A stretch of 41,860 bases of DNA, counting the filler, from Leucoraja erinacea (Eukaryota), in NCBI RefSeq assembly GCF_028641065.1. It is 2 parts of 2 records of this genome, joined end to end, with 100 filler letters (N's around TTAATTAATTAA, not from the genome) between each part and the next. Parts side by side here need not be neighbours in the genome. Positions count along the whole stretch, not along the records: positions 20,315 to 41,860 come from NC_073390.1; 1 more part is not named here. One strand, given 5' to 3'. Below, one piece after another: positions 20,317-41,860 of this stretch (the stretch's first letter is position 1; each line of letters begins with the position of its first letter). A program made the translations under genes and the position numbers. The notes beneath the pieces were generated by a model, which made no database searches, was not told the DNA's origin, and worked only from the letters and a program-made list of their open reading frames with translations.

Positions 20317-20400
20317 ATACTCGCCGTAATGGATATGGTAGGAGGGGGGGAATGTACAGCGAGTGAGATTCTCACCTGTGAAACATTCGTGTGCAAATGA
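20317..20400 (+). CDS. 3' end of a ubiquitin-like paralog (copy 1; the remainder lies in the gap)
   Basis: ILAVMDMVGG-GECTASEILTCETFVCK* aligns with 39537-39584, and the downstream sequence is nearly identical to the copy-2 3' region. Confidence 0.65.
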   Translation: MLAVMDMVGGGECTASEILTCETFVCK

Positions 20401-20921
20401 AGATTCTGGACAATGAATAGTAATGATCCATATGTCTCTGATCCGAAAATGCCGACACAACGATAATCTTAACATTCATAAAGTGTATGTTACCCAATGT
20501 ACCTTAGTATTTATTTCAATATGGGGCTTCAACCTTTCACCTGTTGTTCTATACACTGTATTCTCGATTGTAAGGCAACAATGCAGGAACTGCTGGCATT
20601 AACTGCTCCAATATATACCACTAGTCTCGTAAATGAACGTTTATTCACTGTACCCAAGTTCTACTCTAATTCCGAGTTAGTTAATCCACACATGAGATTT
20701 TATTTACCATAGTACTAAAAATATTCAAGTAATAGTTGTAAAAGCACAAATAATCTCACATTCATAAAGGCTAAGTTTCTGCCCACATATTTTTCATGTT
20801 ATTTTCAGAAAATTGTATCACATCTTGTTATAATTTTACTGTTGGTCAAGTGAAATAATAAAATAAAAGAAATATGTGGATAACTTTGCCATCTTTTCCA
20901 TTGATTCTCTTGCATTAAATA

Positions 20922-21431
20922 TGCCATAGAGGGAGTGCAGAGAAGGTTCACCAGACTGATTCCTGGGATGTCAGGACTGTCTTATGAAGAAAGACTGGAT
21001 AGACTTGGTTTATACTCTCTAGAATTTAGGAGATTGAGAGGGGATCTTATAGAAAACTTACAAAATTCTTAAGGGGTTGGACAGGCTAGATGCAGGAAGA
21101 TTGCTCCCGATGTTGGGGAAGTCCAGGACAAGGGGTCACAGCTTAAGGATAAAGGGGAAATCCTTTAGAACCGAGATGAGAAGAACTTTTTTCACACAGA
21201 GAGTGGTGAATCTCTGGAACTCTCTGCCACAGAGGGTAGTTGAGGCCAGTTCATTGGCTATATTTAAGAGGGAGTTAGATGTGGCCCTTGTGGCTAAGGG
21301 GATCAGGGGGTATGGAGAGAAGGCAGGTATGGGATACTGAGTTGGATGATCAGCCATGATCATATTGAATGGCGGTGCAGGCTCGAAGGGCCGAATGGCC
21401 TACTCCTGCACCTAATTTCTATGTTTCTATG
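20922..21431 (+). mobile_element. CR1-type LINE 3' fragment
   Basis: Homologous to 3570-4085; absent from the paralogous site near 40677. Confidence 0.9.
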
Positions 21432-21969
21432 TATGTAGTTCACACATATTTCAATCTTGGGCAGATGTTGGGTTTGGCAAAAGTGAAACCTTTATTGTCT
21501 GCGCTCAATCATGTTCTACAATTCTGTCATAAGGCGAAAAGATCGAAAATGGCCCAAAATTAAGTTACAATGTGATTAGTCATCTGACAACGCAAGAAAA
21601 AAGTATAACTGGTTTAATTGTAAATTGTCCCTAGTGTGTGTAGGATAGTGTTAGTGTGCGGGGATCGCTGGTCTGTGCGGGCGGTGAGCTGTTTCCACAC
21701 TGTATCTCTAACTTAAACTAAACTAAACCTTGATCTTGATCTATCTCCACCTTAAATGTCTCTAATGATCTGGCTAAGACAGAATTGTAGAGATTCACGA
21801 GATTCCAAGAGAAGAATTTTTGACACACCTTGTCGGTTTTAGCATTAGCATCATCATAAGGAGAACTGCAGTTGCAGATTTAAACCGAAGATAGACACAA
21901 AAAGCTGGAGTAACTCAGTGGGACAAGCAGCATCTCTGGGGAGAAGGAATGTGAGATGTTTCGGATTGT

Positions 21970-22195
21970 GGGCCTTTCCCACTTGGTGATATCAGGGTCG
22001 CCAAAATATATTGAACAATTCAAAATCCAGCGGCGACAAAAACATATTGCGACACTTGAAAAAACCTTGCGCACCATATGTCAACACGCCACGTCACCGC
22101 TGCGTTATACGTTTTCACGCTGCATCACAACGCATATTTTTCGGTGACCTGATGCACCAGTCAAAGATGCCGGCATCACTAAGTGGGACAGGCCC
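21970..22195. mobile_element. Harbinger-like MITE
   Basis: TIRs GGGCCTTTCCCACTTGGTGAT / ATCACTAAGTGGGACAGGCCC. Confidence 0.7.
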
Positions 22196-38940: not shown

Positions 38941-39438
38941 GTCCGTGAGTAAAATGTGGCGTCTAGTTTTCAAAAATAAAAGCTGGGATGAAATCGAGAA
39001 AGCAGTTTGTAATGGGGGGGGTGCAAATTTGGAATGACAATATTCCACGGGGTCGATAGACACGTGGTTACGTGTGTGACTAATGCACGGGATCAATGCT
39101 GGATGTAAAGGCGAAGTTTAGACGGGTTACCAAAGACGGCAGCGCAAGGAACTGCAGATGTTGGTTTACAAATGAAAAGTGCTGGGGAACAAAGTGAGCC
39201 GGACAGGCAGCACCTCCATGATGGACAAGCGACGTTTCAGGTCGGGACCCTTCCTCAGACTGATTGTTGTTGGGGATAGGAAGCTAGAATAGAGACACTG
39301 AATCAATGTGTGGATGGGTGTGGGGGGTGAACAAAGTCTGGCAAGTGATCGGTGGAAAAGGCATTCAGGATGGACTTGATGCTGTGTTCTTTTCTCACCC
39401 CCCCCCCCCCCCCCCCCCTCTTTTTTTCTTTTCTGCAG

Positions 39439-39584
39439 AGGTCCGGGGCACAGATGACCTCCGCCTGCTTTTTGGCAGTGATCAACTGGAAGACAATAAA
39501 ACATTGGCTGCTCACGGGATCCAGGACAGATCCACAATACTCATCGTACTGAGTCTGCCAGGAGGGGGAACGTACAGCGAGTGA
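39439..39584 (+). CDS. Ubiquitin-like protein exon 2 (EVRGTDDLRLLFGSDQLEDNKTLAAHGIQDRSTILIVLSLPGG-GTYSE*)
   Basis: Long pyrimidine tract plus cag; aligns with ubiquitin [36 protein letters not shown]; spliced product 94 aa. Confidence 0.88.
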
Positions 39585-40699
39585 GATTCTCACCCGTGAA
39601 ACATTCGTGTGGAAATGAAGATTCTGGACAATGAATAGTAATGATCCATATGTCTCTGATCCGAAAATGCCGACACAACGATAATCTTAACATTCATAAA
39701 GTGTATGTTACCCAATGTACCTTAGTATTTATTTCAATATGGGGCTTCAACATTTCACCTGATGTTCTATACACTGTATTCTCGTCTGTAAACCAATCCT
39801 GCATTGTTTCAATACTTTATTTTTATCCTCACCGAAATAGTCTTTGTATTTCCCCATCAGCTGTTTAGCATGGGATAGTAAATGCGATGATTACACTACC
39901 TATCGAGTGAGTAAATACAACGAGGCAGTTTTGTATAAACGTTGCATGCATGACCTTTGCTCAAATATTATTTACCTTTATCCTTTATTAATAAATATTT
40001 TAAATGTATGCAGTGTTGTACAAGCACAAGGCTGGTGTTTAAGACGGGAGGTGAAAATATTGGAGAACTAAATGTGGAAAGATGACTAATGAAGGCAAGC
40101 ATGCCAAATAATTGACTCACCACTGCCGTCAGGGAACTATGCACTTCTAACCCGAGGCCTGCCCTGGTTTAACACCAAAATGCAACACGTTGCACTTGTC
40201 ACAGTTATATTCTATTTGCCATTCCTTGGCCGACTTTCTCATTTGTTCCAGATTGTAATCCTAAATAACCTTCTTTACCCCCCACTCTATCTCCAATGTT
40301 GGTGTTGGTAGCCAACTTTGCCCAGCTCACTGTACGGCAACAATGCAGGAACTCCTGGCATTAACTGCTCCAATATATACCACTAGTCTCGAAAATGAAT
40401 GTTTAATCATTGTACCCAAGTCCTACTCTAATTCCTAGTTAATCCACACATGAGATTTTATTTACCCTAGTACTATAAACATTCAACTAATAGAAGAAAC
40501 ATCACAAACAATTTCACATTTATAAAGGCAGGTTTCTACACATATTTTTCATGTTATTTTCAGAAAATTGTATCACATCTTGTTATAATTTTACTGTTGG
40601 TGAAGTGAAAGAATAAAATGAAGAAATGTGTGGATAACTTTGTCATCTTTTCCATTGATTCCCTTGCATTAAATATGTGTGTAGTTTACTTATCCTTAA

Positions 40700-41165
40700 G
40701 GGGCTGTCCCACTTGGGCGACCTCCACCGCGAGTTCTGGCGAGTTTGCCCTCAATCCATACTCGTAGCATGGTCGCCACAAGGTCGTAGGAGGTCTTCGT
40801 AACTCTCCTTCATGTTCGAGAGTGGTCTCCGCGTACTCGAGGCCTCAGCTAGGTCGCTGCGGTTTTTTCACTATGTTAAAAAATGCCTGCGAGTAAAAAA
40901 AGGTCGCCATGGAAAAATCGATACTTTTTTTACTCGTAGGTTTAGTCGTAGTAGGTCGGCATGTCAGTCGTGGGTAGTCGAAGCTAGTCGTAGGTAATCT
41001 TCATCATAGTCGAAGGGCGGTCGAAGGAGGTCGTCTTCACTCTCCACTATTCGGTGTCCAATTTTCCCTTAGTTAGTCGAAGCTGGTCTTCAACGCGACA
41101 TTTTTTTCAAACTCTCCTAAGCTCTTCTTAACTTGCCAATTAGGTCGCCCAAATGGGACAGGCCA
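40700..41165. mobile_element. Harbinger-like MITE
   Basis: TIRs GGGCTGTCCCACTTGGGCGACCT / AGGTCGCCCAAATGGGACAGGCC; TAA on the left. Confidence 0.75.
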
Positions 41166-41860
41166 TTTACTCTTCATTCTCAACCTGAAACATCGCCCAT
41201 TCCTTCTCTCCAGAGATGCTGCCTGATCCGCTGAGTTACTCCAGCATTTTGTGTCTACCGTTGATTTTACCAGTATCTGCAATTCTTTCTTACACAAAAA
41301 GTGAAACCTTTATTGTCTGCGCTCAATCATGTTCTACGATTCTTACTGCCATAAGGCTAAATGGCCCAGAATGAAGTTGAACAGAGCATATGTACATTGT
41401 GACAACACACAAACACAAGCAAATAGGAGCAAGAGGACGTCACCCTAAACCTGCCACACCATGCAATATGACAATGGTTGGTGACTTCACTTCTGTGCCC
41501 ATTCCCTATAACACCTATGGGCGGCACAGTGGTGCAACTGTACAGTTGCTGCCTTACAGTGCCAGAGGCAGAATAATCAGGTTCCATCCTGACTGTGGGT
41601 GTTGTCTGTACAGAGTTTGTACATTCTCCCCGTAAACTGCGTGGGGTTTCTCCCTGATCTCCAGTTTCCTTGTGGATTTTATTGTCAATATAATTGATTA
41701 ACAGTTCATTTATATTTTCATAATAAATTCATATTTTTAATGTCTTTGTCAATTTTTGTACATCTTAATATATAGAGACTGGGATGAGTGATTTAACTGA
41801 TAAAGGTTAATAAAAGGTTACATTCATAACGCTCAGGAACATACTCTGCCCACGGCATCA

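What the first reader, a model, noticed from the sequence alone, without database searches (positions are those of the whole stretch)
20317..41860. Candidate interferon-inducible UBL + RBR-ligase cassette (a possible non-ISG15 conjugation system)
Seen: a 94-aa single-domain ubiquitin-like gene with a diGly motif and a 307-aa RBR-like E3 gene lie on the same strand in the order UBL-RBR-UBL. Each complete gene has an ISRE-type motif less than 200 bp before its ATG (GAAAGCGAAAGTGAAAC at 38713; GAAAGTGAAAC at 27887). Known: GAAANNGAAA is the IRF/ISGF3 element, and ISG15 and its enzymes are co-induced through it; ISG15 and FAT10 have two UBL domains, so this modifier is neither. Inference: a physically linked, co-regulated modifier/ligase pair acting in antiviral immunity. 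Uncharacterised homologs may already be annotated in fish genomes; I cannot verify novelty.
Basis: partly seen in the sequence, partly recalled or inferred. Interest (0 to 1): 0.85.

Follow-up and report, generated by a model that had tools for sequence, protein, structure and literature searches.

The report
Skate interferon-type ubiquitin-like gene beside ARIT ligase
A skate genome piece carries a small ubiquitin-like gene next to a ligase of the ARIT family (already shown to be interferon-induced in bony fish), both behind interferon-response motifs and duplicated together; the ligase is known, but its pairing with a private ubiquitin-like partner appears undescribed and is untested.

Summary
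On the + strand lie a 4-exon, 307-aa RBR ligase gene (28078-30444) and a 2-exon, 94-aa single-domain ubiquitin-like (UBL) gene (38802-39584). All splice sites are GT..AG. The only two GAAANNGAAAC sites in the piece sit 191 and 83 bp before the two start codons. The "first UBL" is only the last codons plus 3'UTR of a paralogue cut by the piece's edge. It does show that a ~19.2-kb UBL-RBR unit is tandemly duplicated.

The ligase is not new. It belongs to the vertebrate RBR-only clade named ARIT in 2025. That clade is induced by IFN-gamma and ISAV in salmon, is an IFNphi1-dependent ISG in zebrafish, and appears, by name only, among poly(I:C)- and IPNV-induced genes in cod and trout.

The UBL is closest to ubiquitin, and its GG aligns with Ub G75-G76, followed by a 5-residue tail. 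It lacks Arg72, Arg74, Lys48 and Lys63. A 94-aa orthologue is annotated in Amblyraja radiata, with an accession number directly preceding two ARIT genes on the same chromosome.

Linkage and likely co-regulation are supported. That the ligase conjugates this UBL is untested (my odds about 0.3). Neither induction in skate nor synteny outside skates could be tested here.

The parts
20317..20400 (+). 3' end of an upstream UBL paralogue (copy 1). Its last codons read ...ILAVMDMVGGG, followed by a frame-shifted tail ECTASEILTCETFVCK and a stop. It is cut by the piece's edge.
   Evidence: tblastn, translation and alignment to 39535-39700.
20317..20923 (+). Duplicated 3'UTR and flank of UBL copy 1. 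It is 93% identical to 39537-39791 and 90% identical to 40331-40677, which defines a tandem unit of about 19.2 kb.
   Evidence: Self-blastn.
27887..27897 (+). ISRE-type motif GAAAGTGAAAC, 191 bp before the RBR start codon and just after a TATAATAAA.
28078..28147 (+). RBR (ARIT-family) exon 1: ATG plus 23 codons and 1 nt.
   Evidence: 21 of 23 residues identical to A. radiata P0002.
28742..28839 (+). RBR exon 2, first half of the RING1-like region (...SCRH...WC...).
28962..29135 (+). RBR exon 3, second half of the RING1-like region plus the helical linker.
29863..30444 (+). RBR exon 4 with stop. It holds the IBR (29863-30030) and RING2/Rcat (30115-30207). The codon of the presumed catalytic Cys is at 30154-30156. 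A poly-Asp run spans 30367-30432.
   Evidence: Pfam; alignment to HOIL-1 RING2; profile matches to ARIH1 IBR and RING2; coordinates.
30437..30469 (+). Out-of-frame (+1) remnant of the family's C-terminal TNNENPCTIL-stop (a CaaX box).
   Evidence: compare the C-termini of P0001 and P0003.
38713..38729 (+). Triple-GAAA ISRE/IRF-E-type motif GAAAGCGAAAGTGAAAC, 89-73 bp before the UBL start codon.
   Evidence: A contig of run X7 (labelled RNA only as a guess) begins at 38775, downstream of the motif.
38802..38940 (+). UBL exon 1: 46 codons plus 1 nt.
   Evidence: 76% identical to residues 1-46 of A. radiata XP_032888104.1.
39439..39584 (+). UBL exon 2 with stop. The GG equivalent to ubiquitin G75-G76 is at 39561-39566. 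The tail GTYSE is at 39567-39581.
   Evidence: Pfam PF00240; 75% identical to residues 51-94 of P0271; alignment of P0271 to ubiquitin.

Best explanation
This is part of a tandem array in a skate genome whose repeat unit holds two interferon-responsive genes: a small ubiquitin-like gene followed by an ARIT-family RBR E3 ligase gene. Each gene has its own proximal ISRE/IRF element, so IRF/ISGF3 complexes would switch both on together after interferon or virus sensing. This regulation is inferred for the skate. For ligase relatives in bony fish it is shown in salmon and zebrafish, and like-named genes are listed as induced in cod and trout. The ligase is an RBR-only enzyme with a RING1-like domain, an IBR and a RING2. 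Its conserved RING2 cysteine would take a ubiquitin-type protein from an E2 as a thioester and pass it on. This is inferred from homology and fold. The UBL would be made as a precursor and trimmed after GG. It differs from ubiquitin at the E1- and chain-determining positions, so it is a distinct ubiquitin-like protein rather than a ubiquitin copy. Co-duplication and shared regulation make a functional tie between the two plausible. I put it at about 0.45 in total, of which about 0.3 is that the UBL is the ligase's cargo. No result here demonstrates that tie.
For: The gene models are complete and canonical. The window ligase keeps all 56 family-invariant residues and 42 of 45 near-invariant ones. 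Its last exon hits 213 vertebrate proteins of about 270 aa. A model of the A. radiata orthologue (pLDDT 80.9) matches whole RBR modules of ARIH2, HOIL-1, parkin, HHARI, HOIP and RNF216 over 207-248 columns. The RING2 aligns to HOIL-1 and ARIH1. Family identity rests on two links. Salmon ARIT.2 is NM_001141354.1, and NP_001134826.1 sits in the 90%-identity cluster of P0041, which is 61% identical to the window's last exon. Published induction covers four fish. Salmon ARIT rises by log2FC 11.6-13.5 with rIFN-gamma and above 4 with ISAV. Zebrafish si:ch211-212k18.15 is IFNphi1-upregulated, and its CHIKV induction falls to 0.21 in IFN-receptor morphants. In cod (poly(I:C)) and trout (IPNV) the link is by name only. 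The ISRE motifs are the only two in 21.5 kb, both in sense orientation and within 200 bp of the two ATGs. For the UBL, Pfam ubiquitin scores 40.3 bits on the orthologue, and its residues 6-89 align to Ub 2-76 with GG on G75-G76. The 94-aa orthologue XP_032888104.1 directly precedes ARIT XP_032888105.1 and XP_032888107.1 on one 62-Mb chromosome. The unit is duplicated in tandem. Run X24, recorded as RNA, has low read depth on UBL exon 2 and its 3'UTR. Contigs over exon 1 are seen in runs X7 and X14, which are labelled RNA only as a guess, and X7 has none over the intron bin 39014-39132.
Against: No interferon- or virus-stimulated skate data were available. The UBL splice junction was not among the listed joints, read depth is very low, and several reads come from another paralogue or allele. 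The two runs with contigs over exon 1 are RNA only by guess. The consecutive accession numbers are a hint of adjacency, not a map. This ligase copy has Arg in place of a near-invariant Gly and has lost its CaaX frame, so it could be a decaying copy or an assembly slip. UBL copy 1 has a shifted tail. The UBL is only 75-76% identical to its A. radiata counterpart, against 89-92% for the ligase, which is compatible with relaxed constraint.
Confidence: 0.65

Rival explanations
1. One reading: a dedicated conjugation system. After removal of the GTYSE tail, the UBL is activated by an E1, passed through an E2 to the RING2 cysteine of the neighbouring ARIT ligase, and attached to host or viral proteins. 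That would make it a third interferon-induced modifier beside ISG15 and FAT10.
For: The GG lies exactly at the ubiquitin G75-G76 position and is followed by a short tail. The tail is not conserved between the two copies, while GGG is kept. ARIT is RBR-only with no substrate-binding or UBL domain of its own. The two genes are co-duplicated and both carry an ISRE. An Atlas cluster of 117 chordate UBLs of about 92 aa carries an RBR-type automatic name, 'ARI8', which is also used for salmonid ARIT. This hints that UBL and ARIT share gene models, and so adjacency, in other fish.
Against: No biochemical or expression evidence exists. No E1, E2 or DUB gene lies in the piece. The tail LSLPGG lacks Arg72 and Arg74, which UBA1 and UBA7 substrates carry (established knowledge), so the activating enzyme is unknown. 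The salmon authors suggest ISG15 as a possible cargo. The Atlas name is a lead, not a test.
Confidence: 0.3
2. The UBL is a non-covalent partner supplied in trans. It would bind the ligase as an allosteric activator or adaptor. This would parallel phospho-ubiquitin or the Ubl domain for parkin, NEDD8 for ARIH1/2, and di-ubiquitin for HOIP, HOIL-1 and RNF216.
For: Known RBR ligases are auto-inhibited and are opened by ubiquitin-type ligands (established knowledge). The nearest structural relatives here are exactly those enzymes. ARIT lacks a UBL domain of its own, unlike parkin and HOIL-1. The two genes are linked and duplicated together.
Against: A purely non-covalent ligand has no need to keep a GG with a cleavable tail. 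No binding test could be run.
Confidence: 0.12
3. The two genes are merely neighbours. ARIT works with ubiquitin or ISG15, and the UBL is an unrelated ubiquitin-derived gene, either fast-evolving or decaying. Under this reading its ISRE-like motif matters little.
For: The UBL diverges faster than the ligase (75-76% against 89-92% identity to A. radiata). Copy 1 has a shifted tail. Read depth is very low. Neighbouring genes are often co-duplicated without a functional tie.
Against: The 94-codon ORF, the intron position and the GG...YSE ending are kept between two skate species. A triple GAAA element 73-89 bp before the ATG is very unlikely by chance. Chordate clusters of similar UBLs of 92-96 aa have 70 and 117 members.
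Confidence: 0.2

Closest known systems
ARIT (RBR-only E3 clade named in Atlantic salmon, PMC12234341). Its database labels include 'si:ch211-212k18.15', 'DDB_G0292642-like', 'RNF144A-A', 'ARI5' and 'ARI8'.
   Same: The size and the RBR-only architecture are the same. All 56 family-invariant residues are kept. The last exon is about 60% identical to teleost members. The family is interferon- and virus-inducible in salmon and zebrafish, and this copy has an ISRE.
   Different: This copy carries a long poly-Asp tail. Elasmobranch and several tetrapod members end in a CaaX box that teleost members lack, and here that box is out of frame. Induction has not been measured in any cartilaginous fish. 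The salmon paper does not mention a neighbouring UBL gene.
ISG15 with its E3s (HERC5, ARIH1, TRIM25)
   Same: It is an interferon-induced ubiquitin-like protein made as a precursor with residues after GG. An RBR ligase (ARIH1) can transfer ISG15.
   Different: ISG15 has two UBL domains and ends in LRLRGG. This UBL has one domain and ends in LSLPGG. ISG15 is not encoded next to its E3.
Ubiquitin
   Same: It is the best sequence match: residues 6-89 of the orthologue align to Ub 2-76. The C-terminal half is about 50% identical. Leu8, Arg42, Val70 and GG are kept.
   Different: There are about 9 extra residues in the first half. Lys6, Lys48 and Lys63 are replaced, as are Arg72 and Arg74. The gene has one intron, holds a single unit, and is not fused to a ribosomal protein despite the 'L40-like' database name.
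HOIL-1 (RBCK1) and parkin
   Same: The RING2 aligns best with HOIL-1 around its catalytic Cys. The whole-module fold matches HOIL-1, parkin and the ARIH ligases. Those enzymes combine a UBL with an RBR module.
   Different: In HOIL-1 and parkin the UBL is a domain of the same polypeptide and is not conjugated. Here it is a separate gene with a free GG end.
FAT10 (UBD)
   Same: It is a cytokine-induced ubiquitin-like modifier whose tail lacks the Arg residues of ubiquitin.
   Different: FAT10 has two domains and ends directly in GG with no propeptide. No sequence kinship beyond the ubiquitin fold was seen.

Membership tests
RBR E3 ligases | RING1 with the full C3HC4 set of eight zinc ligands | tested here: inconclusive
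   Alignment A1 keeps only C37, H39, C50, C63 and C74 (plus H61) in this region. The predicted fold nevertheless aligns over whole RBR modules, RING1 included. Zinc sites were not examined.
RBR E3 ligases | IBR domain between the two RINGs | tested here: met
   The family profile matches the ARIH1 IBR (2m9y) at positions 115-170, E 0.0019. The CPGC...CWQC pattern lies at 29863-30030.
RBR E3 ligases | RING2 (Rcat) with the catalytic cysteine | tested here: met
   Pfam IBR scores 25.2 bits on this stretch, against a cutoff of 24.3. The stretch aligns to the HOIL-1 and ARIH1 RING2, with Cys in DMCKY opposite the Cys in HOIL-1 DGCDW. This Cys is invariant in the family.
RBR E3 ligases | Thioester intermediate and E3 activity | not testable with these tools
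   This needs biochemistry.
ARIT clade | Groups with salmon ARIT.1 and ARIT.2 rather than with RNF144, ARIH or the other named RBRs | tested here: met
   The last exon hits P0041, whose cluster holds NP_001134826.1 and XP_014041128.2, at E 5e-50 and 61% identity. ARIT.2 is NM_001141354.1. The NM-to-NP pairing is my inference, and no tree was built.
ARIT clade | RBR module only, with no transmembrane or other domain | tested here: met
   The protein has 307 aa, and Pfam finds only IBR-type hits. One difference is that many non-teleost members carry a CaaX box.
ARIT clade | Induced by interferon or virus | not testable with these tools
   Only the ISRE motif is seen here. Induction is published for salmon and zebrafish, and like-named genes are listed for cod and trout. 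No stimulated skate run was on offer.
Conjugatable ubiquitin-like modifiers | Ubiquitin (beta-grasp) domain | tested here: met
   PF00240 scores 29.7 bits on window exon 2 and 40.3 bits on the orthologue P0271, against a cutoff of 25.4. The Atlas model reaches TM 0.74-0.75 to ubiquitin clusters.
Conjugatable ubiquitin-like modifiers | C-terminal Gly-Gly at the ubiquitin G75-G76 position, exposed by processing | tested here: met
   The alignment ends at GG 88-89, equivalent to Ub 75-76, followed by G(T/M)YSE. Processing itself was not tested.
Conjugatable ubiquitin-like modifiers | Activation by an E1 and covalent attachment to targets | not testable with these tools
   This needs biochemistry. 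No E1 or E2 gene lies in the piece.
ISG15 | Two tandem UBL domains ending in LRLRGG | tested here: not met
   There is one domain of 94 aa ending in LSLPGG+GTYSE.
FAT10 | Two tandem UBL domains with a free GG end | tested here: not met
   There is a single domain with a 5-residue tail after GG.

The most novel reading that the evidence does not exclude
Vertebrates possess a third interferon-induced ubiquitin-like modifier. It would be a single-domain, GG-ended protein encoded immediately upstream of its own RBR ligase (ARIT). The pair would be conserved from cartilaginous fish to some mammals but lost in the human lineage. The residues just before GG would diversify quickly, possibly under pressure from viral deconjugating proteases.
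Probability: 0.22. Interest if true: 0.85.

Novelty: new variant of a known kind. Interest (0 to 1): 0.55.

Why it matters
ARIT is among the most strongly interferon-induced ligases in salmon, yet its cargo is unknown, and the authors who named it could only guess at ISG15. A GG-ended ubiquitin-like gene that sits beside ARIT, is duplicated with it and carries the same type of promoter element gives a concrete, testable candidate for that cargo or for a regulator. If confirmed, it would add a modifier-ligase pair to the antiviral ubiquitin-like systems (ISG15, FAT10). Because apes lack ARIT, human and mouse work would have missed it. If it is not confirmed, the locus is still a useful first annotation of ARIT and of an ISRE-bearing UBL in a cartilaginous fish.

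Tried and rejected
- **Complex prediction.** The ARIT+UBL job was counted but not folded. It gives no evidence either way.
- **UBL exon 2 word search.** It found no candidates.
- **UBL exon 2 HMMER search.** The search of 1.84 billion representatives was swamped by polyubiquitins, so no single-copy relatives could be picked out.
- **UBL exon 1 search.** It found only the A. radiata orthologue.
- **Joined spliced proteins.** Exons were searched one by one by reference, and the A. radiata proteins P0002 and P0271 stood in for full-length analyses.
- **UBL-RBR fusion by splicing.** This was considered because a GTGAGA overlaps the UBL stop. I rejected it: that donor would leave phase 2, RBR exon 2 needs phase 1, and the join gives an immediate stop (my reading).
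- **Salmonid isoforms.** Short salmonid 'ARI8' and 'RNF144A-A' isoforms were checked for an N-terminal UBL, and none had one.
- **GAS motif.** TTCNNNGAA occurs at chance frequency, so the copy at 38750 carries no weight.
- **Other ORFs in the piece.** They are transposon debris: a Tc1/mariner HTH fragment, LINE tails and a repeat of about 380 bp.
- **Literature.** No paper in the library holds 'ch211-212k18.15' in its main text or 'DDB_G0292642'. None describes a UBL next to ARIT.
- **Reads.** Depth on the UBL exons was too low and too confounded by repeats and paralogues to confirm the splice junction.

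
Full report
**What is in the sequence.** The piece (20315-41860) has about 30-48% G+C and is full of transposon fragments. Two clean genes lie on the + strand.

The ligase gene has four exons: 28078-28147, 28742-28839, 28962-29135 and 29863-30441, with its stop at 30442-30444. All introns are GT..AG, the reading frame holds 307 codons, and AATAAA follows at 30497.

The ubiquitin-like (UBL) gene has two exons: 38802-38940 and 39439-39581, with its stop at 39582-39584. 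Its intron is GT..AG and the frame holds 94 codons, ending ...LSLPGG-GTYSE.

**The interferon-type motifs.** GAAANNGAAAC occurs twice in the whole piece, at 27887 and 38719, both on the + strand. The expected number is 0.20, and 1 of 100 shuffles reached two. The looser GAAANNGAAA adds only 22957 and the overlapping 38713. The sites start 191 bp and 89-83 bp before the two start codons. The UBL site is a triple GAAA repeat. Finding the only two full sites in the sense orientation, inside the 200 bp before the only two complete genes, is far from chance. By my estimate the odds are roughly 1e-3 per promoter. A GAS-like TTCTGTGAA at 38750 carries no weight, because that pattern occurs at chance frequency.

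**The 'first UBL' and the repeat unit.** At 20317 only 17 codons homologous to the UBL end remain (ILAVMDMVGGG...), cut by the piece's edge. The 3'UTR that follows is nearly identical to that of the complete gene:
- 20317-20573 against 39537-39791, 93% identical;
- 20569-20923 against 40331-40677, 90% identical;
- a weaker block, 24947-25140 against 41672-41853.

So a unit of about 19.2 kb holding UBL and ligase is repeated head to tail. The order UBL-RBR-UBL is real, but it rests on a fragment.

**The ligase is a member of the ARIT family.** Its last exon finds 213 vertebrate proteins of about 260-340 aa. Skates come first (Amblyraja radiata, 89-92% identity). Sharks, rays, chimaera, bichir, many teleosts, lungfish, amphibians, alligator, platypus, xenarthrans and afrotherians follow. 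They carry a jumble of automatic names: 'DDB_G0292642-like', 'si:ch211-212k18.15', 'RNF144A-A', 'ARI5', 'RNF19B'.

A 30-sequence alignment gives 56 invariant positions. The window gene keeps all of them, and 42 of 45 near-invariant ones.

Pfam sees IBR-type domains. RING2 aligns with HOIL-1 and ARIH1 around the active-site cysteine, and the IBR aligns with ARIH1. An AlphaFold model of the A. radiata orthologue has pLDDT 80.9. It matches complete RBR modules of ARIH2, HOIL-1, parkin, HHARI, HOIP and RNF216 over 207-248 columns. RING1 keeps only about five or six of the eight canonical zinc ligands, so it is non-canonical.

A 2025 paper on Atlantic salmon singled out exactly this clade. It describes RBR-only proteins with no transmembrane segment, mislabelled RNF144A or ARI5, present in teleosts, reptiles and monkeys but absent from humans, and it named the clade ARIT (PMC12234341). 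Salmon ARIT.2 is NM_001141354.1. NP_001134826.1 and XP_014041128.2 sit in the 90% cluster of P0041, one of my hits. The NM-to-NP pairing is my inference.

**Interferon response of the family.**
- Salmon ARIT.1 and ARIT.2 rise by log2FC 13.45 and 11.59 with recombinant IFN-gamma, and above 4 with ISAV. Basal expression is low and restricted to immune tissues.
- Zebrafish si:ch211-212k18.15 is listed among IFNphi1-upregulated genes without a human orthologue. Its induction by chikungunya virus falls to 0.21 in interferon-receptor morphants (bioRxiv 10.1101/693333, Tables S2 and S4).
- Cod microarray features named after the salmon and pike 'RNF144A-A' proteins rise 2.3-7.1-fold after poly(I:C) (PMC3534563).
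- Trout 'RNF144A-A' is among genes induced by IPNV in several leukocyte types (PMC11258392).

The last two links are by name only. Together with the ISRE, this makes the skate ligase a very likely ISG. No stimulated skate data exist among the runs offered.

**The UBL.**
- Pfam places the ubiquitin family on exon 2 (29.7 bits).
- Word searches with exon 2 found nothing.
- Exon 1 found one protein: XP_032888104.1 of A. radiata, 94 aa, named 'ubiquitin-60S ribosomal protein L40-like'.
- The window exons are 76% and 75% identical to it and collinear, and both proteins end GG-G(T/M)YSE.
- That orthologue scores 40.3 bits on PF00240.
- Its residues 6-89 align with ubiquitin 2-76, so its GG falls on G75-G76.

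Read off that alignment, Leu8, Arg42 and Val70 are kept, and Ile44 becomes Leu. Lys6, Lys48, Lys63, Arg72 and Arg74 are all replaced. About nine extra residues sit in the first half. It is therefore a single-domain UBL that is neither ISG15 nor FAT10, and not a ubiquitin copy. From established knowledge of E1 specificity, the loss of Arg72 argues against charging by UBA1. The activating enzyme is unknown.

**Linkage beyond this window.** In A. radiata the UBL (XP_032888104.1) and two ARIT proteins (XP_032888105.1 and XP_032888107.1) have consecutive accession numbers and lie on the same 62,052,929-bp chromosome. This suggests the same UBL-ARIT-?-ARIT order, but it is not a map.

The ESM Atlas places the UBL next to two chordate clusters of proteins of 92-96 aa. 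They have 70 and 117 members, scores of 0.96 and 0.95, and 216 and 206 shared features. One of them bears the automatic name 'Probable E3 ubiquitin-protein ligase ARI8', a label also used for salmonid ARIT. That would be expected if UBL and ARIT exons share gene models in other fish. It is a lead only.

**Transcription.** Only the one read-laying run went on 38300-41860. Repeats dominate the depth.

Run X24, an oligo-dT RNA run of which about 5% was read, has a few reads over exon 2 and the 3'UTR. Several of these carry fixed differences, so they come from another allele or paralogue.

Contigs of runs X7 and X14 are labelled RNA only as a guess. They cover exon 1 from 38775 on, downstream of the ISRE. 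X7 has none in the intron bin 39014-39132. One X7 contig leaves the genome sequence at about 38934, close to the predicted donor at 38940. The junction itself was not among the listed joints.

This fits a weakly expressed, spliced gene but does not prove it.

**How it most likely works.**
- Shown: two intact genes; an RBR fold with a conserved RING2 cysteine; a ubiquitin-type domain with GG and a tail; ISRE-type motifs; tandem co-duplication; published interferon induction of ligase relatives.
- Inferred: interferon signalling drives both promoters through IRF/ISGF3 binding. The ligase takes a ubiquitin-type protein from an E2 onto its RING2 cysteine and passes it on. The UBL is trimmed after GG.
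- Open: whether the UBL is the ligase's cargo (about 0.3), a non-covalent activator like the ubiquitin-type ligands of parkin, ARIH1/2, HOIP or RNF216 (about 0.12), or just a neighbour (about 0.45, which includes about 0.1 for a decaying gene).

No E1, E2 or deconjugase gene lies in the piece.

**Novelty.** The ligase family, and its interferon response in bony fish, are published. The skate copy is a new member. Within the library I could search, I found no paper describing the 94-aa UBL, its ISRE, or its position beside ARIT. The salmon paper names only ISG15 as a possible cargo. The pairing is therefore a new, testable hypothesis rather than a demonstrated system.

**Method note.** Exons were used one at a time by reference, and the A. 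radiata orthologues P0002 and P0271 served for full-length work.

Noticed in passing
window 30367-30469: The ligase reading frame runs through a (GAT)n poly-Asp stretch and stops at LYQ. The sequence TNNENPCTIL-stop, the CaaX ending of other skate ARIT proteins, follows in the +1 frame. CaaX endings (CTIL, CTIM, CTIS, CVIL and others) occur in ARIT members of sharks, rays, a caecilian, axolotl, lungfish, armadillo and tenrec, but not in the teleost members examined. That would make many ARITs prenylated, membrane-bound ligases, which the parts of the salmon paper I read do not mention (it notes only that there is no transmembrane domain). Whether this copy truly lost the box or the assembly slipped is open.
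   Followed up: partly
window 20315-20480 versus 39535-39700: Between the two UBL copies, the 26 nt just before the GG codons differ at 10 sites. The next ~140 nt (GG, tail and 3'UTR) differ at 3 sites plus a 2-nt indel that changes the tail. This could be a gene-conversion boundary, or fast change of the residues that E1s, DUBs and viral proteases read.
   Followed up: partly
window 39791-40335: There is a 544-bp insertion in UBL copy 2's downstream flank relative to copy 1. A contig of run X14 joins 39791 to 40336 without it, so a version lacking the insertion exists in that sample.
   Followed up: no
window 39645, 39722, 39752, 39762: All RNA reads of run X24 over the UBL 3'UTR carry the same four differences. 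They come from another allele or a third UBL paralogue, which is therefore transcribed.
   Followed up: no
window 28783-28785 (exon 2, codon 14): This ligase copy has Arg where at least 90% of the 30 aligned family members have Gly, in the SCGH motif of the RING1-like region.
   Followed up: no
window 21033-21431, 23739-24128, 26224-26600, 35488-35668, 36488-36874, 37583-37738: There are six copies, on both strands, of a repeat of up to about 400 bp whose translation reads ...RTRGHSLRIKGKSFRTEMRRTFFTQRVVNLWNSLP.... It is likely a LINE-tail or SINE family and attracts very high read depth elsewhere. A Tc1/mariner HTH fragment lies at 37862-38221 on the - strand.
   Followed up: partly
protein P0001 (A. 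radiata XP_032888105.1): This 'LOW QUALITY PROTEIN' model contains LKKNITLYRKNIFF..., which matches the translated start of intron 1 in the window. The public model therefore retains intron sequence.
   Followed up: no
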